NCBI RefSeq assembly: GCF_026571515.1
Contig: NW_026865099.1
Coordinates: 62,001 to 126,000, forward strand
Source of the DNA: Ruditapes philippinarum
Taxonomy: Eukaryota
Direction: 5' to 3'
DNA length: 64,000 nucleotides
The notes under the pieces were generated by a model. That model saw only the letters and a program-made list of their open reading frames with translations. It was not told the origin of the DNA and made no database searches. Position numbers and translations under genes: made by a program. Positions 721 to 56,827 of the stretch are shown here, in pieces. Positions within the stretch are counted from its first letter, which is position 1; each line of letters starts with the position of its first letter.

Positions 721-2825
721 ATGGAAGAAAGACACAGATCAGCTCTTAGAAGAGTGCGTCTTGAAATTGTTAAAGATCTTGATTTGGGAACAAAGCTTTA
801 TGCTGAACTGATACGAGCAAAAATCTTTAAAGAAGATCAGATTGAACAAATAAAGGTATTTAGATTTTTCATATTCTGTAAAGAAAATGTTTAAATATGG
901 CAACAATGTAGCTTTGTAAAACTATTTTAGATGAAAGATTTCAAATATTTTTTCATAAAGCTGCAAAAAGAAAATAGACTGGTTATCAAAATTTGTAAAC
1001 TGTTAATAATGGGCATAACAGTTATTTTGATATTTTATTTGTCATCTAAATTGCATTAAAAATGAAGTCATTTACTATGTAAAATTCTGGTTAATTACAT
1101 AGAATGTGACCAGGCAAAAGTTTAATGCATTCATATTGGACAGACAATGACAAAACAAGTAGCAGTCAAAGACTCACATATCTACGCCAAACAAGAAAAA
1201 AACTTACTTTGCACCAAAAAATTATAAAAAAAATGATGTCAAATTTCATCTGTTCTACATTCTATTATAGGCACAATCTACAACTTGTGATCAAGTAAAC
1301 AAACTGTTGGACTTTCTACCAAAAAGAGGACCACAGGCTTTTGATAAGTTTTTAAATCTTGTCAAAAAGGATTATAACTGGCTTGCAGATGAGCTAGAAA
1401 ATGAGCTTGAAAAAGGTAAATTGGACAGAATGATGGATTAGTCAGTATTAATCTTCATACATTGATTCACTCAGTACAATAAATTTGAAGAAACAATCAA
1501 GACTTTTTAACTTGGGTATAGAGACAATAAATATTTAAATTGAAAATATCAAAATGTCTTGTCTCAATTCTTAGACAATATTAACTTGATATGTTAATAC
1601 CTTTACCTACTTCCTTTTTTATTAAGTACCCACAAAGAATTATCCAAAAAGAAGTTGTAAAAAAAAAATCTTCGGCATTACATATCACTTAAGATTTTAA
1701 AACAAGTATAAGGTAATTGTCAAAAATTATGTTTCAGTCTCACCTGGAAACCAAATCAAACAACTCCCTTCAAACAGTCATGAGAACTTGAGTGAGCATG
1801 AGCAGACACAAGAGATGACTAACACTTACCTCACCACTGCTGCTGCTTTCAATGGAACTCACACAGATACAAACAAAAAGTTGATGAATAGAGGTGCAAG
1901 TCCTATTCAAATAATTGAACCTATAAGAGAAATTATAAAAAATAGGAGGCATAATGCAACTCAAACTGAAGAAGGACTATTTGCTAATGCAGACGACAAG
2001 GCCATAAATGAGGGTGACTTATCAAAAACTAAAAGTCATCCTGCAGAATCCACAAATATTGAATCTTTGGATAATGATGATGTAAATCATACAAACACTG
2101 CTCTACCATGGAATAAACAGGTTCAAATGGAGGCCATGAAGCAATTGTATACAAAAGTTATTGGCATAACATCCCAAAATACAGAAACTGTAGAAAGCAA
2201 AGAAGTTACATGGGAGCATATGAACTGTGAAATTGACAAATTGGCAGAAATGTTGAGAAATTCTGATGATTCAAAAATGCTTAATATGTGCTATGAAATA
2301 CTTCCCAACGAAACTTCAAGACAACCACTGAATCAAACTATGAAAAGCTTGCTACAAGACAAAGAAAATCTTCATAAAGAGGTAAAAAAACTAGAGAAGA
2401 TTTGTGAAAAATTAGAGAAAGAGAATGAGAAGTATATAGATGATGTGTATAAAAAATCTAACGAACTTAAAAAAGTCCAAAATGAACATGATAAAGCACT
2501 AAAAAAAATTAAAGAAAATTGCGAAACATTATTAGATGCTAAGGATAAGACATGTATGGAACAGATAGAAGAAAAAAACAAGACATGTCTGGAACAGATA
2601 GAAGAAAAAAACAAGAAAATTGAGGATCTGGAAAAGAAAGTGGAGGAACTCTCAGCACAAAAGCCTAGTCAGAATCCCTTAAAAGTTGATTCTACCAGAC
2701 AACTTGGAAGAACAAGGGCTCAAAGATCTTATTCAGTTTCTTCACAGTCATATACCACAAATAAAACATTTTCCAGGCAAAAAGATGGTCACAGCAAGGT
2801 TCTAAAAGTTATGAAAAAAATATAG
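721..2825 (+). CDS. CARD + coiled-coil protein, paralog 1 (455 aa, 3 coding exons)
   Basis: Exons 721-855 (MEERHRSALRRVRLEIVKDLDLGTKLYAELIRAKIFKEDQIEQIK, donor gtattt), 1271-1415 (AQSTTCDQVNKLLDFLPKRGPQAFDKFLNLVKKDYNWLADELENELEK; acceptor ttatag, donor gtaaat) and 1738-2825 (acceptor tttcag, in frame with ORF 1788-2825). Intron phases 0 and 1 join into an open frame. CARD motif followed by a K/E-rich coiled coil. Confidence 0.9.
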
Positions 2826-2922
2826 TTTGTAGACATAAATATCAAACAGTGATTTTACAATCAACAGAGGCTTAAATCATTATTATACATTTCTGAAACT
2901 AGAGGGTCATGATGATCTATTT

Positions 2923-3654: not shown

Positions 3655-3767
3655 CTTTAAATTTCTTGTAATACTTTTTTTATTTTTATTTTTTTATTTA
3701 TTCTTTGTTTATAAATATTTATTTAAGCTTGATAGCGAAACAAGTTCTTGTAACTTATGTTAATCAT

Positions 3768-10917: not shown

Positions 10918-13900
10918 ATGAACGAGATACAGAAATCGGTTTTACAGCGGCACTATAAGCAGTTGTCAGATGATATTATGATGACAGAAGATCTACTGGC
11001 AACACTCTTCACTAGAAAGGTGTTTGAGAGGGGGATGATTGAAACAATAAAGGTAATGCTCTCTTTTTTAAAATCTCTATAAAATTATTTCGCTATTTAT
11101 TATTTATCTCGTTTTTCAAAAAAAAAATCTCTTTGTAAAAACTGTTTTACTATGTTATATAATGTTTTGTTGTGCTTCTTTTTTTTTGTTTCAAAACTGG
11201 GGTTCATTTTGATTTGTTGTTATTTGTTTATTTAAAAAATAATCCAAATGTCATTATCATCATCATCATCATTATCATCATCATCATCATCACCATCTTC
11301 ATCATCATCATCATTATTATGTACATCTTATTCTTGTTTTTGTATTTATCATTATTATGATATCATCATCATCGCCAGCCATCATAATCATCAATATTTC
11401 ATAATTGAAATTTCTTATCATTTATCTAATCTTATTTTATTATTATTGATGTTTTATTCTTAATTTTATTTTATAAATACCGGTATTATTATAACATCAT
11501 CACCACTCATCTACTTATTCATAATCGCAATTATCAGTTCACCTGCTTACTGAGTGAGTTACTTATTCTGACTATGCAGCCAGTGCAATCTGATCATGGT
11601 CTGCACAGAGTTAGTTATTCAGTTGGTACATATTTTATAATCTCCCTAAAATTGATGAATTAGTATAATCCAGATTGAAGATGGGCAAGTCTATTTAAGA
11701 TATATATTGTGGTACCGGTTATTACATAAAAAAGCCGATGGTACATTAAAAAGATCTATATCCCTAAGTTTTGACAAATAAAATTTTAAATAAATAAACT
11801 GAATAATATAACTGCATGTAACACATTAAGATTTCATTTTAATTCCTGAATACAGTCAAACCTGTGAACAAGGTCATACAAAGGAGGGACCAAAAGTGAC
11901 TTTTATAGCCAAGTGGTCTTTATTGAGGGGTTGTCTTTAACCGTTTGTTAAATTTGTTGAAGAATGGTCTTAACTTGCAGGGTGGTCTTTCTTCAGAGGT
12001 AGTGTTTAACACAGGTTTAACTGTTACTTTGAGTTTCAAATTAAGATTTGAGTTTTCTCACACTTGCTGTATCTCTTTCTTTTCTTGAATGAAAAAGGCA
12101 AAGAATACCTGACATGCAAAATAACATTAACTTACAAAAAAGTGGTATTTTTTATCTGATAAGAATTCAAATAAGGTAAATTGAGCCTGTTTAGATAAAC
12201 TGCATGTAACCAAATAAAACTTCAGCTCAAACTACTTTTATGTTAAGGTGTTCAGTAAATTGCACAACACCATATGGGTTACATAAATATATAAAAAAAA
12301 AAATCAAAGTATAAGTTTAAGAAATGTATCCAGGTGAAATCGCAAAGGCTCAATTCTGGTTGAACTGATCACACCCTCTCCTCTATCCCCAATGATAACA
12401 TTAAGGTCTGCAAAACTTTAATTAATTAGATAATTCAATTCATTCTAGTGGCAATTTTCATTAATACAGGCTGAGAAGACCCCAACGGACCAAGTGTACA
12501 AAATGTTATCAATGTTACCAAAACGAGGTCCCGATGCATTTGACATCTTTGTTGACATTGTAAAAGACGAGTATCCTTGGTTGGCTGCGATGCTGGAAAC
12601 CAGTCTTAAAAATGAAACAGAGTCAATGCTGCAGCTGCAGCGTCAGAATTCCCTCCTAAACCTGAGATGTACGTCTGCTACAACAACATCACAGAAAATA
12701 GAAAATCAGTCTCAAGTAGATGGTAAGTGAGAAAATATTTTAAATTTCGTCTTGAGTTACTTTTTCTTCTTTTTCATTTTTCAATATAGTTACAATCTTA
12801 TAATTTCAAAAGTTTGTGTACCCCCTGGATTTCCTGGGAAAAACCAAAATATTCTAAATTCTGTAGTAAGTCTATTATCAGTCTATTATCATTGGAATAG
12901 GTTGAAATGTATAAATGTATTAAATGCCCATCATTGTTTATGTATTCTTTACCAAAATAAATCTATATATTGACAATGTTTTCAGTTGATTACAATTTGT
13001 GATGGATAAGTTTTCTTAAGCATTCAGAATCTTCTCTTAGACATTTGTCATGTTTTCTTAAACATGATGTATGTTTTCTCAAACATTAACTATGTTCCCA
13101 TCTAATTTGGCTACCTTGCTACCATTTCCTTTTTTTTTAAATAACAGCAAACCTTTCTCTTTTACTTTATGCAATTTATTATTCAAAGTCATGGAAATCT
13201 TAATTATACAAGTTTGTCATCTTACCATTCTGCTTAATTTATGTTTAGGAACTACACCAAGACCACTGGAAGTGAATGCTGACCCTGACATAAAGACAAA
13301 AGTGGGAACCTTTATACACAAACAGTTTGGTCAGAGCAAAAGAATCTCACAACAAGATAAGAAAATCATGGAAAAATGGTTATCTGAACAATTACAAGCA
13401 GAGAGAAAAATTAGGTAATTGTCACTTATTTAGAAAACAAAATTCAGCAGTGTTATAATGGGTTAAGTATTTTTGCCTGTAACACAGTTGCTTTTTGATT
13501 AATACTCTTTGCCCATTGAGATATTTTGTATTCTTTGAATATATAGTCAAATTAGGTAAAATTTCTTAAGTCATTTATTGTCATAGTCAAATCATTGTCA
13601 GATATTTTGCAGTTCCTTAAATATATATGCATAGTTTCCAAGACAGTCTTTCAAGCTACCTCTGCTTTTACATTAAAGTCTAGACACTGAGAGTCAAATT
13701 AAAGTTATAAAATCCATGCTATTTCAGAATCCCAAGCTTATTTGTAAGCAAAATTAATACCTAAGTACACAGGTAAAATGTTTAAGATGAATAAAATCCT
13801 AACCATGTTTGTGTTTTTTGTATTTTTTTATATTTTATAACATTTTGAGAACATAGATAGAAAATTAATCTGCAATAAAAACAGCTAATTTCCTTCTCTA

Positions 13901-14988
13901 TATCTAGTATTAACACTTAGTTGACACAGACCAGGACTACATTATTATTAACATAAATATTGTTATTAAAAATATGACAATTGTTGACACAAGAGAAACC
14001 TTTGGCGGTGAATTGTAAAAACATGCTTAAAACAAGTACAAATAAACTTTCAAAATATGTAACTTGTCTAATATCATATCTAAATATTATGGTTATGAAT
14101 TATGATAATTCCAGGGCCAAGAAAAGTTCAATTTCAACAGAGGAAGAGATGCAAGACCGAAGTGCATGTACAAGTCCTGATCCTATTCAAGGTGACTTGC
14201 AAAAGGTTTACAACAAAGTACGAGATGAAAACCTCAGTGACCTTCTAAACAGTGCACATGCTAGCAAACATTTTGAAGGTGAGAATGAATCCAAAGGCTC
14301 TGATGAAATTGATGCATCTTTTAAAAATGATACACCCATGGACATGGCAACAGTTGTAACGAAGCTTGACATGGAGATAGACAAACTGATCAACAGAATG
14401 AACCATATGGAAGGTCTTCTAACACAATGCCACTATATCCTCGGAGACCCAGACCGAAAACAAAAGCTACCAACTCTTATTAAAGACTCCCAAATGGAAG
14501 GTAAACAGTTTGAAAGAGAGCTGAATAAGGAGAAAGCTAAAACTGAAAAGATGCTTCATGAGTTATATGACTATTGTAAGTCTATCAATAAACTAGAAAA
14601 TGTCAGGCAACAGCAGAGAACAAATATTGAAAAGAATAGTGAAGAAATTGAAAGACTCAAAGCCGAGAACGCTGTCCTCAGGGAGAAATGTACAATGCTT
14701 GAAACAGTCAACAACAAGCATTTGGAAAAGGAAAAGACACTTAACAACTTGAAAAAGATGGTTGATGATTTGAGAAGTAGTCACACAAATCTAGCAGATG
14801 AGAATGCCAACTATAGAATCAATTATGGAACAAATGCTCTAAGAAACAATAGAAGACTAGGAGGAAGAAATGCAGTAATTCGTCGAGGGTCAACTGTTGC
14901 TGAAACCATGACAACCACAGTCAGAAAACCAGTTACAAAACAGGTTTTAAACACAAACAGAAGGTCCAAACCTTTGAGTAGAATTTGA
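10918..14988 (+). CDS. CARD + coiled-coil protein, paralog 2 (475 aa, 4 coding exons)
   Basis: Exons 10918-11052 (MNEIQKSVLQRHYKQLSDDIMMTEDLLATLFTRKVFERGMIETIK), 12470-12722 (AEKTPTDQVYKMLSMLPKRGPDAFDIFVDIVKDEYPWLAAML...), 13249-13414 and 14115-14988. All introns GT-AG, phases 0/1/2; total 1428 nt, in frame. Confidence 0.92.
11249..11320. repeat. (ATC)n microsatellite in intron 1 of paralog 2
   Basis: Direct inspection. It explains the poly-Ile and poly-Ser ORFs. Confidence 0.9.
11853..12023. mobile_element. Tc1/mariner (pogo-like) MITE, 171 bp
   Basis: TA|CAGTCAAACCTGTG ... CACAGGTTTAACTG (14-bp TIR, 1 mismatch). Confidence 0.7.
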
Positions 14989-25536: not shown

Positions 25537-28500
25537 ATGAACAAATCACAAAAGCGTACGCTACAGAAACACAACCCTGAACTGGTCCATGATCTAGAAT
25601 TGAGCGCCGATCTTGTAGCCAAATTCATACACCATGGACTCTTTAACGAGGACATGATTGATGATATTAAGGTAGGAACTATTTTTTTATTTACATAATT
25701 TTTGTTGCTGTTTTTTTTGTAATTTTTTCATTATTGTTTTTTAAGTTTTTGTTTTTGTTTAGGGTTTTTTGTGAGTATTTTTGGTCAGTTTAGAAAACAT
25801 TATCTCACTTACAAACTTTTACAGATTTAAACAAGAACACAGACTTTTCTCTCTCTTTTTCCATGAATTTCTTATGGCATATGTAGGATTCAATCACTGA
25901 AGAAAAAAAATATAAAGACCTTAAATTTTAAATATTAAAATGGCAGTTTTTTAAGTATTTCAAAAAAGTATTTAATTATTCTCTTAAATTCATAATTTTA
26001 ATACCCTTTTTTTGAATTACTCTATGAAACCTAAATGGCAGATGTACATTCTCTTAATATGAACATTTTCGCAAAATTTTTCTTCCCCGTATAGTTATCA
26101 ATTGAGTGGTCATTCCAATAATGTACTTTTAGAGTTGAAATTGAAAGTGCCTATTTCTTAGTGATAATTTTATCAATTTGTTGACAAAAAAAATATTACT
26201 CTTATCCTTACACTTTGATTCAACTTCTAAATTGTCATATAAATATAAGTCATGACTTACAGAAAACTGTAAAAGTAACTGTCCAAAGGTATAGTTACCA
26301 GTATACTGTTTAGTTTAGTATCATCGAGAAAATGAAATATATTTCGAATGACAAGATATAAAAATTTGTTAAGAGTAGTGAAAGTATCATGAATTGGTAA
26401 CTTGGTATCATTAAAAGTATTGGTGAGTGTATTGGTATCATACCATTTCCTTAATTCTTAATGATATCTGCATTTCGAAGTATCATATAAATTGAAGACT
26501 TTTAAGCATTATTATTTCAATGAGTCGTTCTTATTTTTCCTTAAGCCATGTGGTCAAATATAGTTTTGATTTCCAGAGTAACTGACTCACTTTCAGAACC
26601 TTGAATTACAAAATTAACAAATAAAGCTTTCAAACTTTTAAGTCACCTCAGATTGTTTATTATTTTCATCAGAAAAAGGAAATTTAACTTTTAAGATTAT
26701 CTTATAATTCAATTCAGTACCAAAAATGAATTACGAACTATATTTAATTCTACATTTCATTCATTTACTTTACAAAGAACCAAAACAACAATTTTTAAAA
26801 TCATTAATTCGATTTCAAAATCCTGTTTGTTCATATGCCAAATAAAAATGAAACAAGAGGGCCATGATGGCCCTAGATCGCTCACCTGAATTATCAAACT
26901 CATCCAAACAATTACCTAGACAAGCATTCTGACCAAGTCTCATGACAGGTGAGTCAAAAATGTGACCACTACAGTGTTAACAAGGATTATCGCATATTTG
27001 AGCAGTGCGACCTAGTTTTTTTACCCAGGTGACACATATTCAAACTTGACCTAGAAATCATCAAAACAAACTTTCAGACCAATTTCCAGGATACTAATGG
27101 ATCAAAACAGTAGCAACTAGAGTGTTTAACAAGATTTTTCTATTTTTAGCTCCGGTGACCTAGTTTCACATGCGATTTCGAACTCATCCAAGCAATTACC
27201 TAGACAAGCATTCTGACCAAGTTTGATGATAATTGGAGTCGAAAATGTGACGCACTAGAATGTTAACAAGGTTTTTTCCATATTTGGGCAGTGTGACCTA
27301 GTTTTTCATCCAAGATGACCCATGTTCGATCTTGACTTAGAAATCATCAAAAACAAACTTTCAGACCAATTAACAGAATATTTGGATCACAACAGTAGCC
27401 ACTAGAGTGTTAACAAGATTTTTTCTATTTTTAGCTCTGTGACCTAGTTTTTCATCCGAGATGTCCCATGTTCGATTTATTCCCAGCAATGACGCTAGAC
27501 AAGTTTCCTGACCAAGTTTGATGACAATTGAGTCAAAATTGTGACCACTAGAGTGTTAACAAGGTTTTTCTATTTTTAGCTCCTGTGACCTAGTTTTTCA
27601 TCCGAGATGACCCATGTTCGAACTCATCCGAGTTATTACCTAGACAAGCATCTTGATCAAGTTTGATGATGATTGATGCAAAAAATGTGACCGCGCTAAA
27701 GTGTTAACAAGGTTTTTCTATTTTTAGCTCCGGTGACCTACTTTTTCATCCGAGATGACCCATGTTCGAACTCATCCAAGCTATTAACTAGATAAGCATC
27801 CTGACCAAGTTTGATGATGATTGATGCAAAAATGTGACCGCTAGAGTGTTAACAAGGTTTTTCTATTTATAGCTCCGGTGACCTAGTTTTTCATCCGAGA
27901 TGACCCATATTCGAACTCATCCGAGCTATTATCTAAACAAGCATCCTGACAAAGTTTGATGATGATTGGGTCAAAAATGTGACCACTAGAGTGGTCACAA
28001 GGTTTTTCTATTTTTAGCTCCTGTGACCTAGTTTTTCATCAGAGATGACCCATGTTCGAACTCATCCAAGCAATTGACTAGACAAGCATTCTGACCAAGT
28101 TTGATGATGATTGGTTCAAAAATGTGACCACTAGAGTGTTCACAAGGTTTTTCTATTTATAGCTCCTGTGACCTACTTTTTCATCCGAGATGACCCATGT
28201 TCGAACTCATCCGAGCTATCACCTAGACAAACATCCTGACCAAGTTTGATGAAGATTGGGTCAAAAATGTGACCTCTAGAGTGTTCACAAGGTTTTTCTA
28301 TTTTTAGCTCTTGTGACCTAGTTTTTCATCTGAGATGACCCATGTTCGAACTCATCCGAGCTTTCAACTAGATAAGCATCCTGACCAAGTTTGATGATGA
28401 TTGAGGCAAAAATGCGACCGCTAGAGTGTTCACAAGCAATTGTGGACGGCCGGACGGACGACGGACGACGGACATTCATCGATCCTAAAAGCTCACCCTG

Positions 28501-32639: not shown

Positions 32640-32676
<37 letters not shown>

Positions 32677-40211: not shown

Positions 40212-40282
40212 TAAAGAAACAAAAATTGAGCTGAATTTATACAAGGATCAATATCAAAGGACACACAGACAGAGACATAATA

Positions 40283-43200
40283 ATGAATGAATTACACAGA
40301 GCTGTGCTACAAAAGCACACACAGGATATTGTCAGAGACATGATTGTTACTGAAACCTTACTAGGAACAATGTTTCAGAATAAAATCTTTGACAGTGAAA
40401 TGGTGGAAATTATCAAGGTAAAATCAAAAACATTCATCTTTCAAATGAATTTAACAGTACATGCTTAAGATTAAGTAAATAAAGGTTTATTTTATCAATT
40501 TAAAGTGTATATATAGAGCTATATATCATTCTGTTGCCTGTATTTTGAAAAATTGTTCTTTAAATTTTGCAAAAGGATACACTGCAGTCCCATTATAAAA
40601 CTCATGTTGGAGTCCAAGGTATTGCGTAAAAGTTCTAATAACATGTGATCTACCCGTTATAACTGCGTTCTGATATGTAAAACTCATTGTGAGTGAGTAG
40701 GTTAGTTTTAATTTCATACTGAAGGCTTAACAATCTTTGCAACTAGAACTCTCAGTGTAAATGAAGATTTTTTTTTAAGATATACCTAGTAGAGGTCAGT
40801 TGATGACTTCTAAAGCTTTATTGGTGTGTGAATATCTCCCTCCTTGCATAATTTAAGGCGCAAACTGGCACCTGAGTAGAACCACTTTTTATAAGCTAGC
40901 TGGATAGCTTCCTCACATGGAAGAATCCAGACTCCCTGACAGGATTCAAACCCACAGCAGTGAGGGGCCAGTGGTTTAAGGTCAGTAACCTTAACCACTA
41001 TACTACAAACATTCAAATTATGTTCTGTTATTTGTTATTTAGTCTGGAAGAACACACAGTGAACAAGCGTACAAGATGTTAGAGTTTCTACCAAAGCGAG
41101 GACCAGATGCCTTTGACAGCTTCTGTGAGGCTTTACACGAAGATTATCCCTGGGTCGCAAAACTGCTGAGAGAGACTGTTGAAACAGAAAGTGAAAGAAT
41201 TTTAGCTGTACAAAGCAAGAAAGATGATATTGCTACTGAACAACGTAAGTTGCTTTTATATCAATCTAATAAGGATGAACATAAAAAGGTAAGTAACTTA
41301 TGTTAAAATCTATAAATTTATCAAATAAAGGATATGCACATTTACTTCCCTTTTTGATAACAAAATTAATTTTGTATATTTCTTCCGAAATGGTGCACAA
41401 TTGAATTTTAAAATAGTCCTTCATCACTGTAGGCTGAATTCAGTGCTTGACCTAAACCGAATACATTTACTTTCTTCATGGAAAAGTGACAGCTTCCATT
41501 TAAGAACGTAAAAGTTCTGTCATTTCCGCATTTATTTACATGCATTTATTTGAATAAAGTACATCAATTAAATCAATAAAAATCAATTTCCCGATCTAAT
41601 TTTATATTGAAATGAACAAAATAACTAAAAATTAAATTGGAAATCATCATCTTTTTGACGGACGGAACTCGCAGCTTCTTCACCAGGTCGGATATATACT
41701 CGCATTTTCGAATAATATTGGAAGTTTTATTTCAACAAAGACAATTTATTGTTGGGGTATGTATTGCCTTACATTCTATTTGATTAGTTTATGTGTTTTT
41801 CAATTATTTTGCAAAATAAAGGAATTAGAATAATGTAGATGATGAACAATGAACGTCTGTCAAAAAAGCAACGTTCGCAAAAAACTGTCCATCGACTCGG
41901 TTATTGTGTGATTATGTATTGGGTGGGGATTCAAAGTTAGTGTTAAACTTGGTACTTTCTGGTTTTACAGGTGGTTTCTTAAGTTTTGAAGCCATAACCA
42001 GAAATTTTATTGAAAAAAGGTTGCTAACGTAATTTCTGTCAATTTTAGTGAATGACGTTCGCACATTTGTTCCTCAGTTTATAGCTGTTACTTCCCTTTT
42101 TTGCGTAGTGACAAGAAACTACGATTAAATCTGTAAGTATCCGAATGCAAAAACATGGCCGAATTGAGACGCTCGATTACATGATCCAAATTATTTTGAG
42201 TAAGTTTGTGTCTGTCAAGTGTTTTAAATGTTGACGATAGCAACAATAAGTACATATAGATATTTTTATATATTTTAAAGAAGAGAAAACATATTAAAGT
42301 CGAGTTGTATGCAGGAAATAGACAAATACACGGACGTCTACTGCTTCCAATGACTGATTACGCTTAAAGCTGTTGCGAATGTCATTTTTTGACGGACATT
42401 CTTGTTGCATACGTCATTTATCGACATACACAATTGGTGCTATCGTCATTCTTTGACGGCTGTTAATGATGCGATCGTCATATTTTGACAACTGTCAATG
42501 TTTTGACATAATAAATCTACATGTAAACATTGTAGTGTCAGTAATACTAGGGAGTGAGAGATGGATTGAGTTGAATTACAGTCAAATCGGCCCCAAGTCA
42601 GATCGGCCCCAAGTCAGAGCGGCCCCAAAATAGTCAAATCGGCCCCAAGCAAAATCGGCCTCAAGTCAGATCGGCCCCATTTTTTTTCTTTGTTCATTTT
42701 CTTATTTAAATGTTGTTAAAAAAAATGTGTGGATTGGAATATCAAATGACTAACAATGGATTACATAGAAAACCAGAACAAAACATAATAATCAATATAA
42801 TTTATTGTCTGAGTATAACATTTATCTTCACTGTACTAAACTATTTATTGTCTATAAACATATGAACAGTATGTAAATGTCACTTTTCATGTAATTGTCA
42901 CTTCTCAAGCAAAGGTATAGTGGAACCCCATTGTATCGTGCTATTCATTGTATCGATCTATTCACAAATCTTTAGATTTTTTGCAAAATACGTCACCTAC
43001 TGATTGTTAACATTAACAACAGTGTCACGAAAATCTTTCGCATTTATTTTTGTACAGTAAAATGATCAAAAACATGTTTCCAGTACCGTAAGACGCTGTA
43101 GATAATAAATAGACTTATAAATAATATGTTCTTATTAAAAGTACATTTACTGTCTGTTAAAAGTTCCTAAATTTATGCTGACATTTTAAAACAGACATCT

Positions 43201-46200
43201 ATGTTATTAATTGACTTATTTATCTAACATAAAGATGGTTAATGTTTCCCAAACTTTGGCTAACTGAGCAATTCTCACAATGCATCGATATAATGGCGTG
43301 ACCTAATTCTTCAACCTGTTTGACATGTCTGTAAATATCCGTTTATTCCAAAGCTAAAAACTATATATCAGTGATGTTTGCCAAGTAAATATTATGGCAA
43401 AAGGATCAAAATAAATGATACAAATTAAATATTCAGTGAGATTTGATTTTTTTAAATTCAGTTGTGATTTATGGGTAAATAGATCGATACAACAGGGTTC
43501 CAGGCTAAACTATGAATAACTTGCCTTATTACAAATTAATGCTTTCTGTTTTCTCATTTATATGTCTTTAAAAGTTATGTCTCTACAAGTTTGCAGAAAG
43601 GTATACCTAAAAATTCTGAGTAATGATATATGTAGGAATACTTAATATTAACTTTATAATGTAAAATCTTGTTTGTTTGCAGTGACTCGAAGCAATTGAA
43701 GACTTGTGGCGATGATTTGGCCGACAGTTTGATTGAAGACATTGGTATACCTGCTACCAAGCAAAGGTAAACTATGAATAGTAAATGAAACAATTTCTCT
43801 TTGTATACCCACCCTATAAAATGCCGGGCATGATGGCGCGGTGGTTAGTGCACTTGTTTTTCATTTTGAGAGTTGTAGCTTTGATTCTCGGTCAGGCCAT
43901 TTCTCTCGGACCAATTGATAAAAGTCCTTGTGTCTTAAGTCTTTCGTCTCGCACCTCTGTTTCAAGTGAGGCAGAAAAAGAGGTAATATGTCTAAAATGA
44001 TATGGAGAGTGTGTGCACAAGTTAATTTTTGAATCAGTTTTTAAAGGCGTGGTTATCAGTTTTTAAAGGTCTACATTTCAACAACTTTTCATGCAGGTAC
44101 CCTGTAGGAACTAACCTTCTCATCAGAAATGGATCAGAAAGTTTTAAAGCTGTTGTAAGTAGTAATGTTTTAACAGATTGGTTAAATTCAGTACACAAAA
44201 AAAGGCAATGCAAACTAGCAAATTTGTCAGCTGTCTGTCAAAAGGTGCAATCAGTATTTTTTTTCAATTTTTCTGGAAATGGACAAAGATTTATCAGCGT
44301 TTATAAGAAGCTAAACAATTAGTACTGACTTTATTCTTCAATGCATTACTTTTGTTTGGCCTGTATTGTGCTGTTCCATTTTTGTTACTTTGGAAGTTAT
44401 GTTTTTAAAAAAAATTGTTACTTGTGAGTTAAAAAGTTGTTTTTTTGTCTTCATCACATTTAATATATGTTAAAACCCAATATAAGGCACTCTTGCTGAC
44501 AAGATTTGCAGTCAGATATCAATCTCCGGAGTTCATGAGTTTAAGCCTTAGCCATACAACATGAGTTGAATTCCCAGCCATATAACAGTATTTCAAGCCC
44601 CAGCCATATAGCATTTATTTAATAAAGATTAATTATTAAATAATTTTTATAATACTGCATGTTTGTAACGTCGCTTTTCATTGGATAATCTTGATGTTTA
44701 TATAGTGTTTTATACACGTGACACAGCTATTGTTGATTAATAAAGAAATCTTGCTTTATTCCTCTAAAAATGATCCTTGCTAGCGATTTGGGTTTTATTT
44801 TACAAACAGCCATTTATATAGGGCCATATAACCTGTCAAAAATCTTTATAACTAATAATATAGCCTTACTATTCAGGTAAAGCAGTTGTCTGTTCATGTG
44901 CAAATATTATTTGTTTATACATGTAGTGTATATGCATTTTTAAGTCTTTTCTTCCGGTTAATATTGTGATGATATGAAGCAACATTTGAATGTCAATCAG
45001 CTTGACTTCATTACCAGTTGTGGATACTTGGTAAATACATTTGATTGGTTCATTGAGTCCAGTTTGACCTCTTTGATAGATACTGGTAATTGATTAAATG
45101 TTATTGGTGCAACAAGTCATTGATTGTACATCATTTTGCAGGTTGTTCAAACCCATGAGCTGCACAGAGAGGAGAAAGTCTATGGATTGTGGGTCCAGTT
45201 CTATAAGAAAGGAAAGCGACAATTATGGACATTGGAGGAGAAATCTTTCTTTGTTTGTTGGGAGGATATCATTAAACAAGTTGCTGAACCTACTGTCTAT
45301 GCATGGATCTAGATAATACTACAAATTTTGAGTGTTTGGTGTACAGTTACACTTAATAGCCCATCAGAAAGGCCGACATGGTGACTTGTGCTTTTACATC
45401 CAATTTGGTGTAGACTGTTTTCATACTTTCTTACAAAAACTGTTAGAAATATAATATATCTTTTGAAAAGTTTCAATAGCCATTGTCAATTTATTTTGTA
45501 AAATACGTTCTTTAGTGCCTAGAACAGTTGATGGCCAGTGTTTTGACAGTTAATTTCGGATAATGTCCAAATAAATTTACATAATTTACTTGTTTGCTCT
45601 TAGAAAACTTTTACTTGTTGTCATTTGTTTTCTTGTATCCATTGCGAAAAAGTACTTTAGAAATTGTGAAAGAACATTTGTTCCGTCCAAAAATGATGGT
45701 AGCAACAATTTGTTCCGTCCAAAAATGATGCTAGCAACAATTTGTTCCGTCAAAAAATGACGTTTAGCAACATCATCAAAAATGAATAAATCTGTATCTG
45801 GCCTGTTCCCTGCAGAGATAGTACTTCCTTTACATACAGTTTTCAATCTTTTATTACTTAGAATAAAATGCTGCTAATTATAATAAAGAGAATGCTTAAT
45901 TTTTCCAATTTCTGAATGTTGTGAACGTAAAAATATCCGTCAAATATTCTGTCAAATAATGACGTTAGCAACATGAAATTTAAAACATGATTAAAACTCA
46001 AAAATACATCTGCTATAATTTTTATTTTCATGTTTTTGACCTAATATAATAGCAATCTTATCATATATATTAAAAAAACTGCAATTATTTTATATGTACA
46101 AAAAAATATCCTTGGGAGCTATTTTGACGGAAATTTTATGTTCTTAAATGGAAGCTGTCTGTTGTAGATTCGAATCCCACTAGGGACATCAGATTTTTTC

Positions 46201-48919
46201 ATGCAAGGAAACTATCCAGCTAGCTTACAGAATGTGAGTGGTTCTACTGTGGTGGAAATGCACAGATATTTACTTTTAAAACTTGTTGTCACACCAGTAA
46301 AGCTGACAGTGTCATCTGACATGATGAAAGTCATAGTGTCTCAATGCCAAAAAAATATCCAAAGTAAATAATTATCATTCATGTACATTATAATGAAATT
46401 GTAAACTACAGAAGTTTGTATTTTTTTCAGTAACCACACCCAGAAGTTCATCAGCATGTGGTAAGGCGGATTCAGATATCAAGATACGCGTCAGCGCATT
46501 TGTACAGAAACATTTTGGACAGATACGTCGTATATCTAATGGTGACAAGAAAGCTATTGAATGGATGATGATTAAATGGTTACAAGCAGAGAGAAAAAGA
46601 CTTACTAAATCTATAGACGAGGCATATATGGGTAAAACGTCTTCTAATTTTTCTAATTTTGTTTCTTTGATTTAAATCACACTGACTATGGTGACAATCC
46701 AGTTTTATGAAAAGAGACAAAGGTATCTCTCTGTGCATCATTTGAGACAATTGTGAAGGCACCTTAGCAGAACCATCAACCTTTTGTTATCTTAAAGCAG
46801 GATAGCCTCTTCCAAAGAAAGAATCAAAAGTCCCTGTTTTAACTTATGTTTATACAGATACTTGTTTTCCATATGGTTTTAGAAATTTATCAAACATTTC
46901 CCAGGATTTATACTTAGATATATAATGTAATCCAATTTAATTTTCATTTAAAAATTTAAGACTATATATTAAGTTGATAATGAATGACAAATTTCTTTAT
47001 CTAGGCAACTGACATAACACAAGTTACCTTGAAATTATTCCATAGGAAAGAGTATAGCAAGTTGCTGACAGTTTCAGTGCAATAATTTGCCTCAAATGGA
47101 AACGGCAATCCTTTAAAAATTGTCTTACTTTTTGTCAATAAATTGTATTTTGTCAATACAGAAACCCATCAGACGGATGTTCTTCAGAGTGAGAAGGTGA
47201 AGGACAAACTTTTCTTCCTTTACACCAAGATTGTGATGAAACAACAGAAATCTCCAGTGAAAAAGATCCTGGGCAGAGCAAAGGTACATCAAATATTACA
47301 GGGACTCCACTGAGGTTTTTTGACATGATGGGATTAGGATTTTTTTCAAAGATTTGTGTACCATTTGATGTATATCTGAACCACTAGCTTTTTGCAAATT
47401 TTCAGATTATTCTCTTGTCCTGTTTTTATAGAATATTCATTACAACCTTCTCCCTTAATAAAGTCAGTAAGATCTCCCTTAATAAAGTCAGTAAGAATTG
47501 CAGTTACTATAAATTTTCACTTTAATTCTGAGTATATTTCTTTATTATCCATTCTTTTTGCATTCTAAGTACTTCACTTGATTTATGTAAAAGTTTATGT
47601 AGTCAGTGGAGCTATTTTAGCTATCTTTTTACTTACATTGTTAAATGAAACTTTGCTACAGTATATATTTCATGGGTATACTGGAACCTAGAAAGAGAGT
47701 AGTCAAGCAATGTTGCAAACCATCAATATTTAAATGCACATTATGTCATAGAAATGAATTTATTGTTCCTTCCTCAGAAAGGACAAACATGTATTTTATA
47801 ATGTTTTACTAACAGATATAGAGCATTTTGGATGATTTTCATCTGAAGAAAATACAAGTAAATGTAAAATAATCTGTCAAAAAAGTAGCAAAATGTACAA
47901 TATTTTGACTTAAATTACAAAATACTTAATCACTACAACTGAACTTATTTCCAAAAATGCATCAGAAGGAAATGATGTTTGAGCTATATAGTTCAAGAAT
48001 AACTTTTTGGAAATTAAAACCGGGCACTTAAATTTGATTTTTAAAGATTTTGAGGCATTCTCCTCTATACTATAAAGTAGGCCTAATATTTTCTAAGAGC
48101 TTATAGGCCTGTTAAGCATACTTACAGCCACTATATATAAGGCAACTACTATTGTTAAGTCATGATGTTAGTCACTTCATACAAATACAAAAACAAACAT
48201 TATAAATTTTTTTTAATGATTCACTAAAGGCAATAAGTGATGGAGTTGAAGGAGCAGTTACACCTATAGAAGACAAGAACAGAGACATTGCTCCACAAGA
48301 TATAAACTTTGATGTCCTTAAAGCAGAAATTGATGATCTCTTCACTCATATGGACTACATGGAAAAACAAATTGACAGAAGTTATGACTATATAAATGGT
48401 AGAATGAGTGGGAAGGACATATCTATACTTGTACATGAATTATGTGGAGAGTACAGATATAAAGAGAAAGAATTGGTTCAAGAAAAAGTGAAGACAGAAA
48501 AAATGTTAGTCGAGTTGTACACTTTCTCCACAAACTCTAGTAAGCTTGAGAATACGATACATGCTCAAGAGCATGAAATCATAGCACTTAAAGAGCAGAT
48601 AAATAGAGTAAAAGAAGACAACTTGTTGCTTATTAAAGAAGTTACGGAACTTGAAAAAGCCAAGTTAATTCATCTTGAAAAAGAGAAGACACTGATTGAG
48701 CTGAAGAAAGCAAAGGAAGATCTACATGTAATGATATCAGTGGTAAATAAAGAGAATAAAGAATTAAGGGAGAAGATGCAGCAAGGAATAGCAAGAAATA
48801 CTGGAGGTAGACTGTATCAAAATAATAGAAGAGCACTGGCAAATACAACAAACAATGCACAGAAAGCTGTACCGAGAAGAGTGGTGCAAAAGAAAAGATC
48901 TGTTAGTTTTAAGATGTGA
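40283..48919 (+). CDS. CARD + coiled-coil protein, paralog 4 (about 449 aa, 5 coding exons)
   Basis: Exons 40283-40417, 41043-41244 (MLEFLPKRGPDAFDSFCEALHEDYPWVAKLL), 46431-46631 (TTPR...ADSDIKIRVSAFVQKHFGQIRRISNGDKKAIEW...LQAERKR), 47162-47283 and 48230-48919. Phases 0/1/1/0, total 1350 nt. The last acceptor is a weaker AAG. The C-terminus aligns with paralog 2 (EKxKTEKMLxELY, KLEN, HLEKEKTL). Confidence 0.85.
40810..41000 (-). mobile_element. tRNA-derived SINE in intron 1 of paralog 4
   Basis: Core GGCACCTGAGTAGAACCAC...AAGCTAGCTGGATAGCTTCCTCACATG and a tRNA-like head. Confidence 0.65.
42580..42680. repeat. short tandem AGTCA(A/G)ATCGGCCCCA repeats (orphan transposon terminus)
   Basis: About 6 copies of a 16-18-bp unit. 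No inverted partner seen in the window. Confidence 0.7.
42918..43505. mobile_element. degenerate pogo/Tc1-like MITE nested in the 4.67-kb element
   Basis: TA|TAGTGGAACCCCATTGTATCG ... CGATACAACAGGGTTCCAGGC|TA. Confidence 0.55.
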
Positions 48920-51130: not shown

Positions 51131-51165
51131 GACAAAATCTAACCTCAGACATTAAACCATCAAAC

Positions 51166-52467
51166 ATGGACCAGAAGGAACGGCGAGCCTTGGACAAATG
51201 CTTCGATGGATTTCTCCGTGACCTTGACCCATCCACATCATTCATACATTCCTTGTATGCAGAGGGTGTCCTTACTGAGGAACAAATGGACAGAATCAGT
51301 GTAAGTACCCTTTATGTGTATGTAAGAATTACATAAAAAGTCAAATCTTTATTGACTAGTCTTGGAAATTTGGTAAACAGGTTGTCTACATAATTATCAC
51401 TGTATTTTTGTGCAGCGTGATGGTCTATAGTTTAAAGAAATTTAAATCAACAAATAAACTGATTCGAAAAAGGTGTTTTGTGATCAGGTTGATAAATTTG
51501 ATAAAAGGTAGTAAACTTTTCACTTGAAGTTTTTTAAATGATTTAAAACATATCTATTAATAGAAGAAAGGAAGCTGAGAAGTTATCCTTCACTAGACCT
51601 CCGTATATAACTGTAAACTAACGAAATTAAAACAGTAATCCAGTGACCGAGGTTTCCCTATTATTCTTATTTCAGGATTTAAACCTATCAAATATGAACT
51701 TATAAATGCTCATTGAGCAAACTTATCCTTTGTTGCTTCTCAAATGAAATGGGAAAAAAATCATTTTTTATCTGTATCTTCAGAAAATCTCTTCAAGAGA
51801 GACCCAGGTAGCCATGTTGATTAGATTCCTCCCTCATCGTGGACCAAATGCCTTTACTGTGTTCAAAGACAAGCTTGAGAAGGACTATCCCTGGCTTGCC
51901 CAGAGGCTTGCAGATGAGCTAAAGAAGCTTCAAAGTGGTCAAGCAAGCATTAATAAGAGACTGGTAACTACAATAGAAACAAAGCTTGTTCCACTGGTAT
52001 ATTCTGGAGGAGCAGGTTTTGATATGTGCGATGAAAAAGCACACCCTGGTGTCATTATAGAAAAACTTGGTGATTTGTTAAACAGTCTTGAACTGAAGTG
52101 TCACAAAGCTCTTGATATAACAGCAATTGGAAAGCACAAAACTCCAATACATAAACTCATAGAAGATAGACTAAGACAAGAGAAGAGGAAGGAAGGTAAT
52201 GAAGATGTAGATGACCTTAACAAAGAGGTTAAAGACTTGAAACGGCAAGTCAGAGAGATGACTAAGCTGAAATCTGAAAATGAAAAACTGAAAACTGTTA
52301 TATCTAGACAGAAGGAGAAGCTAAAAGACTACAATAAAATGTCAAGAGATTCTAAAAGACATAAGCAGGATATGGAGAAGTTTAAGAAGGAGACTGAAAT
52401 GTTAAGATATGAGGTAGAGACATTGAGAGAGCAGCTTAGGAGTAATATATCTAACCCTTATGCTTAA
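51166..52467 (+). CDS. short CARD + coiled-coil protein, paralog 5 (272 aa, 2 coding exons)
   Basis: Exons 51166-51300 (MDQKERRALDKCFDGFLRDLDPSTSFIHSLYAEGVLTEEQMDRIS, donor gtaagt) and 51784-52467 (KISSRETQVAMLIRFLPHRGPNAFTVFKDKLEKDYPWLAQRL... then coiled coil). Confidence 0.93.
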
Positions 52468-54788: not shown

Positions 54789-56827
54789 ATGAATTCAAAG
54801 GAGGTGGCTGCCTTGAAAAAATGTTCAGAGCGGATAAAGAAAGACCTGGATCCAACATATCCCTTTCTTCATTCGCTGTATGCAAATGATGTCATATCAC
54901 ATGAGCAAATGGAGACAATAATGGTGAGAAATTAACCTTTCACTTTCATTCTTACCAAATAATGATAAATAAAAAATATCTTTTCTACTTTTTTGTTTTA
55001 AAACAAATTCTGAATATATACTATATTTCTAAACGGCGGCTATAAACCATAATTATGCAAACTGCATTTTTAATTTTCTTCCTTTCGATTGCACTAATCT
55101 AAGGAAAATAGTTCTTATATAAATGCTACAATAAAAGAATGATTTGCACAATTTGTTTAACTTTTTTCTCAACAACACTCTAAAGGTCATATGGCAACAT
55201 TCTGGCTTTACTGATGGAGGAAGACATCAGGTGCCCTTCCATGCATTATTTCGGGCATGAATGGATACCAGAGTAGAACCACTGACATTCTATAAGCTAG
55301 CTGGATAGCTTCCTCGCATGAAAAAATTCAAATTCCCTGGCAGGATTTGAACCCACAGCAGTGAGAGGCAAGGACTCAAGTGGTTTGAGGACAACATCCT
55401 TGACCAGTCAGCTAGGCATGTCCCTTACTTGAATCATTTTCAGACTGATAATTAACAGTTTTAAAAATACTATTGAACATCATTACTTAAAGTGGTCTTT
55501 TATCAATCCTTTTTGAAAAAAGGTTCAAGCCCTGAAGAAACAGGAAAAACATTAAACTTGTAAAATGAGTTAAATTTGGGTGAACAAAAATTTATAATAC
55601 ATGTCACGGTTCAGAACTGTTCACTATTTAGGGGAGAAGATTATGTAAGCAGCCGGATAGCTCAGTCTGTAGATTCCGAGGGTCCCGAGCTCGGGTCCCA
55701 GTCAGGCTGCACATTTTTCTCACCCTGTGACATTTGATGCCAAACGGGGGACCGTGACTAATATAGGTCAGAGTTTAATTTACATTGCTCTGTAACTCTG
55801 TGAAATTCCAGGAAGAATTTCAATATAGCAGGGGAGTACATGTATGTCACGGTTCAGAGCTGTTCACTATTTAGAGGAGAAGATATGTAAGCGGACAGAT
55901 AGCTCAGTCGGTAGAGCTGTGGAATGGTATTCCAAGGGTCCTGGGTTCGAGTTCCAGTCAGGCTGCACATTTTTCTCACCCTGTGACATACATAATCTGC
56001 AAAGATTGTAACTCACACAGTTTTGGGGGGAAACCCTAAGGAATTTAACGAGGAAATAATTACTCAATACCATTATCTGGTTCATAAAAACAATTATCAA
56101 TGCATTGTCAAATTATTTTCTTTTGATACAGGCAATCAGTGTCAGCTTAGAAAGAGTCACAAAGTTACTAACTATATTACCAAGAAGAGGTCCGAGCGCT
56201 TTCACAACTTTTCGTAACCTTTTATCAAAAGATTACCATTGGCTCGCTGAAGACCTAGATGCCGCTTTAAGAATAAAAAGGAAGGATGCCACTAAAGAGG
56301 AAATACACTTGAAGCTTATCAATGTGATCAATAACCAGGTCGTACCCCTCGTTTTCCCTGAAACTTTTAACTTTGTCAGCAGCAAGGACCATATCCATCA
56401 TACTATTACCAAACTTGGTGATTTGACCAGAATACTGGAGAAAAGGGTTCTTAAAGCGTTAGAGCTGATGAAAACTTCGACCAAGACCATTTGCATTGAA
56501 ACCCTCATTAATGAGAAGCTCAAAGCAGATAGATCTGCAGATGCCTTAAGTACGGAAATCAAGGAATTAAAAAGGAGGGCCAAACAGGATGAGAAATTGA
56601 AGAAGGAAAATGAAAAGCTTAAAAGAACAAACGAAAGCTTGATGAAGAAGCTAAAGGAGAAAAGTCAGGAAATTAAAGATGGTAAAAAACACTACAGTCA
56701 CTTGAAAAGGGAAAAAGATGAAGCAACAAAGAAAGTCGAGCAGTTGAAGAGGGAAATACAATGCATGAAGAAAGAAATTGAGTCTACAAATTCTATGTGT
56801 GAAATAACACCTTTGTACGGGAATTAA
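54789..56827 (+). CDS. short CARD + coiled-coil protein, paralog 6 (276 aa, 2 coding exons)
   Basis: Exons 54789-54923 (MNSKEVAALKKCSERIKKDLDPTYPFLHSLYANDVISHEQMETIM, donor gtgaga) and 56132-56827 (AISVSLERVTKLLTILPRRGPSAFTTFRNLLSKDYHWLAEDL...). Clearly the sister of paralog 5 (DLDP, HSLYA, VPLV, KLGDL, ENEKLK). Confidence 0.93.
55180..55425 (-). mobile_element. tRNA-derived SINE in the intron of paralog 6
   Basis: GAGTAGAACCACTGACATTCTATAAGCTAGCTGGATAGCTTCCTC core, same family as 17175-17405. Confidence 0.7.
55602..55988 (+). mobile_element. complete TRIM (miniature LTR retrotransposon) with tRNA-like LTRs, Helenus-like
   Basis: LTR1 55602-55732 and LTR2 55845-55988, both TGTCAC...GTGACA. 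112-bp internal region with a degenerate PBS (TGATGCCAAACGGGGG) and a PPT (AGCAGGGGAG). 4-bp TSD TACA on both sides. LTR2 holds the A box TAGCTCAGTCGGTAGAG and the B box GGTTCGAGTTCC. Confidence 0.88.

What the first reader, a model, noticed from the sequence alone, without database searches (positions are those of the whole stretch)
721..56827. Six-gene tandem cluster of caspase-2/RAIDD-type CARD + coiled-coil proteins: candidate undescribed death/immune adaptor family
Seen: six same-strand genes splice into intact ORFs, each a CARD followed by a long coiled coil, with no protease, death domain, NACHT or helicase. They are highly diverged yet carry no stops or frameshifts, which points to an old, maintained expansion. 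Known: RAIDD couples this CARD type to a death domain for PIDDosome assembly, and the CARD9/10/11/14 family couples a different CARD subtype to coiled coils to nucleate BCL10. Inference: these proteins are a hybrid architecture that could self-oligomerise through the coiled coil to activate or sequester a caspase-2/9-like initiator without PIDD. I know of no named family matching it.
Basis: partly seen in the sequence, partly recalled or inferred. Interest (0 to 1): 0.9.

Follow-up and report, generated by a model that had tools for sequence, protein, structure and literature searches.

The report
Clam CARD coiled-coil adaptor gene cluster
A Manila clam genome region holds a row of related genes whose proteins join a caspase-2/RAIDD-type CARD (a cell-death signalling handle) to a self-pairing helical rod. 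The family is conserved across bivalves, is unstudied, and may help switch initiator caspases on or off in animals that lack the usual activation platforms.

Summary
The window is Ruditapes philippinarum contig C13586:62001-126000. It carries six + strand genes, each with a 45-codon first exon, a phase-0 GT-AG intron and a second exon that completes a CARD. Helical and coiled-coil sequence follows. Genes 1, 2 and 5 equal NCBI models exactly. My gene 3 model is 98% identical and collinear to a database protein. Gene 6 has a Mercenaria orthologue. Only the 3' part of gene 4 is unsettled.

CARD is the only Pfam domain found. The best solved relative is the RAIDD CARD (E down to 5e-11). CARD9, CARD11 and BCL10 are not hit, so these are not CARD9-type CARD-CC orthologues.

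New points:
- The array has at least nine genes, and relatives lie on two other contigs.
- The clam's own CARD-caspases share the same two-exon CARD layout. Its CARD+death-domain gene does not.
- There are two subfamilies. The short one (genes 5 and 6) occurs in seven bivalve orders.
- A homodimer test of the gene 5 rod passed (0.37 against 0.00).

Function is inferred: oligomeric CARD adaptors acting on caspase-2-like caspases. I rate it a new variant of a known kind, of moderate interest.

The parts
721..2825 (+). Gene 1 (NCBI LOC132727816, 455 aa). Exons 721-855, 1271-1415, 1738-2825. CARD, then a linker, coiled coil and a basic tail.
   Evidence: The joined model equals P0031 exactly. Pfam CARD 1.6e-14.
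10918..14988 (+). Gene 2 (LOC132727803, 475 aa). Exons 10918-11052, 12470-12722, 13249-13414, 14115-14988.
   Evidence: The joined model equals P0016 exactly. Pfam CARD 9.4e-16. AF2 gives a long helix at 297-415.
25537..31713 (+). Gene 3 (own model, 425 aa). Exons 25537-25671, 28771-28930, 30731-31713.
   Evidence: Best splice-site pair. The ORF is intact. The model is 98% identical and collinear to P0173, also 425 aa. Pfam CARD by exon: 0.017 and 9.1e-9.
40283..48919 (+). Gene 4 (model uncertain, 376-394 aa). Exons 40283-40417, 41043-41244, 46431-46631, possibly 47230-47283, and 48327-48919.
   Evidence: CARD exons score 5.6e-4 and 3.1e-6. The last exon is 37% identical to that of gene 2 (E 2e-17). 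The 3' junctions are weak, with several stop-free solutions.
51166..52467 (+). Gene 5 (LOC132727813, 272 aa). Exons 51166-51300, 51784-52467. Short subfamily.
   Evidence: The joined model equals P0001 exactly. Pfam CARD 3e-12. AF2 shows a CARD fold plus helix 167-267. The dimer test passed.
54789..56827 (+). Gene 6 (own model, 276 aa). Exons 54789-54923, 56132-56827. Short subfamily.
   Evidence: The ORF is intact with a GT-AG intron. It is 54% identical end to end to Mercenaria P0036. Exon 2 scores CARD 0.0026; the orthologue scores 5.7e-15.

Best explanation
SHOWN. The window holds six members of a tandem gene family with at least nine genes on this contig. Each gene encodes an N-terminal CARD of the caspase-2/RAIDD sequence class, built from two exons split by a conserved phase-0 intron. 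Helical sequence follows, ending in a helix of about 100 residues, with no catalytic or other known domain. The short subfamily (genes 5 and 6) is conserved across bivalves. The long subfamily (genes 1-4) has disordered linkers, a basic tail and some young, fast-evolving copies.

PREDICTED. The C-terminal helix of gene 5 pairs with itself as a parallel, in-register coiled coil.

INFERRED. Each protein is a constitutive dimer or higher oligomer that displays two or more CARDs. Through CARD-CARD contacts it binds the CARD prodomains of the clam's caspase-2-like initiator caspases, or CRADD. It thereby sets their local concentration. Most likely it acts as a proximity platform for activation, in a lineage reported to lack an Apaf-1 CARD platform and PIDD.

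CARD class:
- RAIDD (3crd) is the top solved relative at 6.7e-8, 4.8e-7 and, with the profile, 4.8e-11.
- The next CARDs score no better than 0.02.
- Three other clam CARDs show no such preference.

Shared gene structure:
- The clam CARD-caspases on C14595 and C1293 have the same first exon of 44-45 codons, the same phase-0 intron, and an exon 2 that starts the same way.
- They score 56-60 bits against the cluster's CARD profile. The CARD+death-domain gene on C10044 scores 27 bits.

Structure and pairing:
- AF2 gives a six-helix CARD plus helix 167-267 at pLDDT above 90. The nearest folds are CARDs.
- Homodimer test of residues 120-272: score 0.37, best of 3 controls 0.00. The runs agree in at least 72% of contacts, and the partner's pLDDT is at least 69.
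- The mark was reached by 21 of 30 proteins solved as pairs of one chain and 0 of 23 solved as single chains. Those counts are for microbes. For eukaryotes they are 17 of 29 and 0 of 30.
- The interface runs in heptad spacing from 183 to 267 with same-residue contacts.

Conservation:
- Orthologues are 88% (Mercenaria) to 65-70% (Dreissena) identical.
- Named members occur in Unionida, Mytilida, Pinctada, Tegillarca and a scallop.

Context in the literature:
- Molluscs are reported to lack APAF-1, PIDD and PYCARD, with CRADD taken as the only CARD activator (PMC11463336).
Against: - No binding partner was tested. The caspase CARDs are split over two exons and could not be handed to the complex tool.
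- A constitutive dimer would need some regulation to act as an activator, and none is identified.
- The dimer pass could be generic for any long amphipathic helix, although the controls scored 0.00.
- The CARD tree does not resolve the family's position among caspase and other CARDs, nor the joint monophyly of the two subfamilies.
- The homologous CARD aside, the rods of the two subfamilies are not demonstrably related. They may do different jobs.
Confidence: 0.5

Rival explanations
1. Decoy or brake. The proteins bind caspase-2-like CARDs (or CRADD) and keep them from their activation platform. Vertebrate CARD-only proteins and ARC/NOL3 work this way.
For: - There is no effector domain.
- The CARD module has the same exon layout as the caspase genes. 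That is the route by which vertebrate CARD-only decoys arose from caspase-1 (established knowledge).
- Young copies evolve fast: dN/dS is 0.59 overall and 0.81 in the CARD.
- Bivalves are known for large anti-apoptotic expansions such as the IAPs (PMC7831173, listed).
Against: - A decoy needs no conserved 100-residue dimerising rod, yet the rod of gene 5 is as conserved as its CARD.
- Multivalent CARD display usually nucleates rather than caps.
- Nothing here separates the two directions.
Confidence: 0.25
2. Immune signalling adaptors that feed NF-kB or MAPK-type pathways. They would work like CARD9/BCL10, or like the oyster CARD protein CgCARDCP-1, rather than controlling caspases.
For: - The CARD + coiled coil architecture resembles CARD9.
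- The protein-language search placed gene 5 nearest to chordate CARD and CARD9 clusters, but at lead-only scores of 0.78-0.82.
- An oyster CARD-containing protein is reported to act in LPS recognition and NF-kB activation. I saw the title only (PMID 29751033, cited in PMC7836458).
- The tandem, partly fast-evolving array is typical of immune genes.
Against: - The CARD class is RAIDD/caspase-2, not CARD9/BCL10.
- The relation to CgCARDCP-1 could not be tested, because the paper and its sequence are not held.
Confidence: 0.17
3. Straightforward orthologues of the invertebrate CARD9-like CARD-CC family that partners BCL10 and the paracaspase.
For: - The architecture is similar.
- Molluscs are reported to have CARD-CC, Bcl10 and a type 1 paracaspase (PMC5978004).
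Against: - Neither the single proteins nor the profile hit CARD9, CARD11 or BCL10 chains at E up to 10, while RAIDD scores 5e-11.
- The rod is about 100 residues, not about 300.
- There are nine or more copies instead of one.
Confidence: 0.03

Closest known systems
RAIDD/CRADD (CARD + death domain adaptor of caspase-2)
   Same: It has the closest CARD by sequence: 34% identity to the human RAIDD CARD, E 5e-11 with the profile. Both share the 'LP-K/R-RGP-x-AF' helix 4 motif. That this motif is also in caspase-2 is from my memory of the human sequences. Some members are auto-named 'CRADD-like' in Mya arenaria.
   Different: No death domain, so no route into a PIDD-type death-domain complex. A coiled-coil rod stands in its place. 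The clam's own CARD+death-domain gene (C10044) has a one-exon, distant CARD.
CARD prodomain of caspase-2-like caspases
   Same: Same two-exon CARD with the same phase-0 intron and the same exon 2 start in the clam's own caspases. A two-exon CARD is also reported for oyster caspase-2 homologues and for vertebrate caspase-2 and -9 (PMC7836458).
   Different: No p20/p10 protease domain (there is no PF00656 hit on this contig).
CARD-CC family (CARD9/10/11/14)
   Same: An N-terminal CARD followed by a coiled coil that oligomerises. By analogy, the rod could also regulate the CARD.
   Different: The CARD belongs to a different class, with no similarity to CARD9, CARD11 or BCL10 chains. The rod is much shorter. 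The genes form a multi-copy tandem array. A BCL10 link is untested.
CARD-only proteins and ARC/NOL3 (decoy CARDs)
   Same: A CARD without an effector domain. The CARD probably shares ancestry with a caspase prodomain module.
   Different: These clam proteins carry a conserved dimerising rod and, in the long subfamily, linkers and a basic tail.
CgCARDCP-1 (oyster CARD-containing protein, Fish Shellfish Immunol 2018, PMID 29751033)
   Same: A bivalve CARD protein without a protease domain, reported in LPS recognition and NF-kB activation (title, seen).
   Different: Whether it belongs to this family is unknown. Neither the paper nor its sequence was available.

Membership tests
CARD domain (Pfam PF00619, death-fold) | Sequence match above the curated cut-off (23.9 bits) | tested here: met
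   - Gene 1: 54.1 bits. Gene 2: 58.1 bits. Gene 5: 46.8 bits.
- Gene 3 exon 2 alone: 35.7 bits. Gene 4 exon 2 alone: 27.5 bits.
- Gene 6 exon 2: only 18.2 bits, but its Mercenaria orthologue scores 55.5 bits.
CARD domain (Pfam PF00619, death-fold) | Six-helix bundle fold | tested here: met
   The AF2 model of gene 5 has helices at 3-18, 24-32, 38-46, 50-60, 66-79 and 81-. The top Foldseek matches are all CARDs, with target TM 0.66-0.76. The gene 2 CARD is modelled at low confidence.
CRADD/RAIDD | RAIDD-class CARD | tested here: met
   RAIDD (3crd) is the best solved relative at 6.7e-8, 4.8e-7 and 4.8e-11.
CRADD/RAIDD | C-terminal death domain | tested here: not met
   No PF00531 hit in any protein or exon. 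No Death hit on contig C13586.
CARD-CC (CARD9/10/11/14) | CARD followed by a coiled coil | tested here: met
   AF2 long helices. The homodimer test passed at 0.37 against 0.00.
CARD-CC (CARD9/10/11/14) | CARD of the CARD9/BCL10 sequence class | tested here: not met
   No CARD9, CARD11 or BCL10 chain is hit at E up to 10 by P0001, P0016 or profile A1.
CARD-CC (CARD9/10/11/14) | Nucleates BCL10 filaments and signals through the paracaspase | not testable with these tools
   Needs biochemistry.
Caspases (Peptidase_C14) | p20/p10 catalytic domain | tested here: not met
   No PF00656 hit in the proteins or on this contig.
Caspase-derived CARD-only decoys | CARD exon structure shared with a caspase gene of the same genome | tested here: met
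   The same first exon of 44-45 codons, phase-0 intron and exon 2 start are found in the C14595 and C1293 caspases. The direction of descent is not resolved.

The most novel reading that the evidence does not exclude
A bivalve-wide, so far undescribed family of caspase-2-class CARD + dimerising-rod proteins shares its two-exon CARD module with the caspase genes. It would be the missing activation (or gating) platform for CARD-caspases in molluscs. These animals are reported to lack an Apaf-1 CARD platform and PIDD, and CRADD is currently thought to be their only CARD activator.
Probability: 0.2. Interest if true: 0.75.

Novelty: new variant of a known kind. Interest (0 to 1): 0.55.

Why it matters
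How molluscs activate their expanded set of caspase-2-like initiator caspases is an open question. Recent surveys report no APAF-1, PIDD or PYCARD in molluscs and name CRADD as the sole CARD-bearing activator (PMC11463336). That survey's text never mentions coiled coils.

This family is conserved and multi-copy. Its CARD is of the same class as caspase-2 and RAIDD, and it carries its own oligomerising rod. It is therefore a concrete, testable candidate for a further layer of control over cell death or immune signalling in commercially important clams, mussels and scallops. It also gives a clean example of a death-fold module recombined with a new oligomeriser.

Lineage-specific reshuffling of death-fold domains is common in bivalves, however, so the architecture alone is no great surprise.

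Tried and rejected
RNA evidence:
Junctions in this species rest on NCBI models and collinear database proteins.
Synteny in other bivalves therefore rests only on shared contigs and on consecutive locus tags: Mactra 022722/022725, Mercenaria LOC123540555/6, Potamilus 008512/3.

Spliced models:
- The joined models of genes 3, 4 and 6 were not sent to any search tool. Those genes were searched exon by exon by reference.
- Joining was done only inside local scripts, for ORF checks, identity tables, a local BLAST against already fetched proteins, and the tree.

Homology beyond the CARD between the two subfamilies:
- hhalign aligns only columns 1-92.
- The cut C-terminal parts give 11% probability. 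I noticed a helix-loop motif before the rod by eye, but it is unproven.

Leads that went nowhere:
- Foldseek and the protein atlas found nothing for the post-CARD part beyond generic long helices.
- Three other clam CARDs (C8499, C8738, C6638) were searched against solved structures to find the clam's true CARD9/BCL10-type CARD. None was of that type, so the true CARD-CC orthologue was not located.
- My crude heptad script places coiled-coil segments in the C-terminal halves but barely beats shuffled sequences. I rely on AF2 and the dimer test instead.
- The CARD tree has too few columns (101) to place the family.
- The CgCARDCP-1 paper is not held.
- The 247-aa ORF at 39471-40214 is an 18-bp minisatellite, not a gene.
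Full report
WHERE THE WINDOW IS

The window is contig C13586:62001-126000 (+) of the genome G000. The protein of gene 5 is letter-identical to an NCBI protein of Ruditapes philippinarum, the Manila clam. The sequence is AT-rich (about 32% GC) and has no N.

CHECKING THE OBSERVATION

A tblastn of gene 1's exons against the window finds six copies of a first CARD exon (starts 721, 10918, 25537, 40283, 51166, 54789). It also finds six copies of a second CARD exon, all on the + strand. Every first exon runs 45 codons from an ATG and ends in phase 0 directly before GT. Every second exon follows a pyrimidine tract and AG.

Three database searches returned the NCBI models of three genes. Brute-force GT-AG joining in a script reproduces them letter for letter:
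- Gene 1 = P0031, 455 aa, exons 721-855, 1271-1415, 1738-2825.
- Gene 2 = P0016, 475 aa, exons 10918-11052, 12470-12722, 13249-13414, 14115-14988.
- Gene 5 = P0001, 272 aa, exons 51166-51300, 51784-52467.

The other three genes rest on my own models:
- Gene 3: the best-scoring splice pair gives 25537-25671, 28771-28930, 30731-31713. The resulting 425-aa protein is 98% identical and collinear over its whole length to a 425-aa database protein, P0173.
- Gene 6 (54789-54923, 56132-56827; 276 aa) is 54% identical end to end to Mercenaria LOC123540555. Its locus number directly precedes that of the gene 5 orthologue, LOC123540556.
- Gene 4 has clear CARD exons, a middle exon and a last exon related to those of gene 2. 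Its last junctions have weak splice scores, and several stop-free solutions (376-394 aa) exist.

All six models are intact ORFs with GT-AG introns.

Joining was done only in local scripts.

DOMAINS

CARD is the only Pfam family with a meaningful score:

| Gene | Pfam CARD score |
|---|---|
| 1 | 54 bits |
| 2 | 58 bits |
| 5 | 47 bits |
| 3 (exon 1 + exon 2) | 15.5 + 35.7 bits |
| 4 (exon 1 + exon 2) | 20.3 + 27.5 bits |
| 6 (exon 2 only) | 18.2 bits; its orthologue scores 55.5 bits |

No peptidase C14, death, NACHT or helicase domain appears.

AlphaFold2 on the gene 5 orthologue alignment (mean pLDDT 81.5) gives a six-helix CARD, two further helices, and one helix from 167 to 267 at pLDDT above 90. 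Its nearest solved folds are CARDs only.

The gene 2 model is poor overall (57.6). It shows disordered linkers, a helix from 297 to 415 at pLDDT 87-95, and a disordered basic tail.

The rods are thus about 80-120 residues, shorter than in CARD9. The six proteins share 20-39% identity overall and 26-48% in the CARD.

WHICH KIND OF CARD

- Against all solved structures, gene 5, gene 2 and the gene 5 profile hit the RAIDD CARD at 6.7e-8, 4.8e-7 and 4.8e-11.
- The next CARDs (Apaf-1, CED-4, caspase-9, CARD8) score no better than 0.02.
- CARD9, CARD11 and BCL10 are not hit at E up to 10.
- Four other clam CARDs searched the same way show no such preference.
- The exhaustive profile search also pulls in a mite 'CRADD-like' protein through the CARD.

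WHAT THE SURROUNDINGS ADD

1. The array continues upstream of the window. Three more genes on the same strand have first exons at contig positions about 15559, 24057 and 52377. None lies in the 30 kb downstream. The nearest upstream gene is P0032, 70% identical to gene 1 by BLAST (73% by global alignment).
2. Relatives with the same split CARD lie on C10133 (one gene) and C10757 (at least four exon-2 copies with coiled-coil-like exons downstream).
3. A whole-genome scan with the CARD, death and caspase models matters most.
   - Two CARD-caspase genes (C14595, C1293) have the same layout. Their first exon is 44-45 codons from the ATG, the intron is phase 0, and exon 2 begins the same way.
   - The clam's CARD+death-domain gene (C10044) has a one-exon CARD.
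4. Scored against a profile of the nine cluster CARDs, that one-exon CARD reaches only 27 bits. The caspases reach 56-60 bits and the C10757 genes 80 bits.

A published survey reports the same two-exon CARD for oyster caspase-2 homologues and for vertebrate caspase-2 and -9 (PMC7836458). The family's CARD module is thus closest in gene structure to the caspase prodomain module.

A maximum-likelihood tree of 54 clam CARDs supports two subclades: (5,6) at 99/97, and (3,(1 and two upstream genes),(upstream,(2,4))) at 95/71. With 101 columns it cannot resolve their joint monophyly or their sister group.

AGE AND CONSTRAINT

- Gene 5 has orthologues at 88% (Mercenaria), 70-72% (Mactra), 65-70% (Dreissena) and in Mya.
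- Gene 2 has orthologues in Mercenaria, Mactra and Mya.
- Locus tags suggest kept neighbourhood: Mactra 022722 and 022725, Mercenaria 123540555/6, Potamilus 008512/3.
- The profile search over 1.8 billion representatives finds 13 proteins below 1e-30. Named full-length members occur in unionids, Mytilus, Pinctada, Tegillarca and a scallop. The short subfamily is therefore at least as old as the main bivalve radiation.
- No named member outside bivalves matched beyond the CARD.
- Several orthologues sit whole on contigs of about 1-2.6 kb from sequencing-run assemblies. These are shorter than the clam genes with their introns. This implies spliced transcripts in relatives. It is indirect evidence only.
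- Gene 1 and its upstream twin differ by dN 0.115 and dS 0.197, a ratio of 0.59 (0.81 in the CARD). Part of the array is young and under weak constraint.
- Between the two subfamilies only the CARD is demonstrably homologous.

HOW IT MOST LIKELY WORKS

A controlled prediction of two copies of gene 5 residues 120-272 gave 0.37, against 0.00 for the best of three controls.
- The runs agree in at least 72% of contacts, and the partner's pLDDT is at least 69.
- The mark was reached by 21 of 30 proteins solved as pairs of one chain and by 0 of 23 solved as single chains. Those counts are for microbes. For eukaryotes they are 17 of 29 and 0 of 30.
- The interface runs from 183 to 267 in heptad spacing with same-residue contacts, which is a parallel in-register coiled coil.
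- This supports self-pairing but does not show it.

From established knowledge, CARDs signal by homotypic contacts and initiator caspases are activated by induced proximity. I therefore infer that these proteins are dimeric or oligomeric CARD displays acting on the clam's caspase-2-like caspases or on CRADD.

The direction of action (platform or brake) is not decided by any result here. I put activation or scaffolding first, because the rod is as conserved as the CARD. Molluscs are also reported to lack Apaf-1, PIDD and PYCARD (PMC11463336). Next come a decoy role and an NF-kB-type signalling role. An oyster CARD protein, CgCARDCP-1, is reported in LPS recognition and NF-kB activation. I could not read that paper or get its sequence.

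COMPARISON AND NOVELTY

- The proteins are not CRADD: they have no death domain.
- They are not caspases: they have no p20/p10 domain.
- They are not CARD9-type CARD-CC proteins: the CARD class is wrong, the rod is short and there are many copies.
- They resemble CARD-only decoys in lacking an effector and in sharing the caspase CARD exon layout, but they add a conserved dimerising rod.
- Public annotation calls them 'uncharacterized', 'CARD domain-containing', 'CRADD-like', or gives spurious coiled-coil names such as keratin, GRIP-and-coiled-coil and KIF15.

I found no paper describing the family among those searchable. I rate it a new variant of a known kind.

Interest is moderate (0.55). 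It offers a concrete handle on an open question in mollusc cell death. Death-fold reshuffling in bivalves is common, though, and function is untested.

LIMITS

- Vertebrate reference CARDs could not be brought in for a tree.
- Gene 4's 3' structure is open.

Noticed in passing
G000:C13586 contig positions about 15559-18000, 24057-35000 and 52377-54450 (upstream of the window; loci L002-L006): Three more same-strand CARD genes extend the array to at least nine. The nearest is P0032 (456 aa), about 70% identical to gene 1. The two further ones share a near-identical large acidic exon of about 515-540 aa, which suggests a recent segmental duplication or exon exchange.
   Followed up: partly
G000:C10757:50001-96000 (L016-L019) and G000:C10133:16001-32000 (L014-L015): A second array sits on C10757, with at least four split-CARD exon-2 copies and coiled-coil-like exons downstream. 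A single close relative of gene 1 lies on C10133, with exon 2 73% identical.
   Followed up: partly
G000:C14595:44226-55304 and G000:C1293:147764-159146 (L010-L013): Two CARD-caspase genes have a CARD split by the same phase-0 intron after a first exon of 44-45 codons, as in the cluster genes.
   Followed up: partly
L061:2195-4423 (+), that is G000:C8315:68195-70423: A single-exon 742-aa ORF carries two N-terminal CARDs (Pfam 8.3e-24). About 550 further residues have no Pfam match. Its first CARD is the nearest non-family CARD to the cluster profile (77 bits).
   Followed up: partly
L062:4224-5177 (-), that is G000:C10169:202224-203177: Two adjacent small one-exon CARD ORFs of 99 and 109 aa. 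The second carries the same 'LPRRGPQAFDKF' motif. Its best solved relatives are the CED-3, RAIDD and caspase-9 CARDs.
   Followed up: partly
window 39530-40211: An 18-bp minisatellite of about 38 copies lies directly upstream of gene 4's start codon. It creates a spurious 247-aa low-complexity ORF at 39471-40214.
   Followed up: yes
window 1-324, 4794-5750, 26897-28436, 36174-37537: Satellite-like tandem arrays with units of about 145-161 bp lie between the genes and inside intron 1 of gene 3. The arrays at 1-324 and 26897-28436 share a similar unit.
   Followed up: no
window 55893-55966 (+): ARAGORN calls a tRNA-Thr(GGT)-like sequence inside the intron of gene 6. It could be a tRNA-derived repeat or a chance call.
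   Followed up: no
window 13249-13414, 30748-30858, 46431-46631: Genes 2, 3 and 4 share a short conserved helical segment (about '...F-I/V-H/Q-K/E-H/Q-FG...DKK...W/F-L') between the CARD and the rod. It is a separate exon in genes 2 and 4 and is fused to the last exon in gene 3. It matches no known family.
   Followed up: partly
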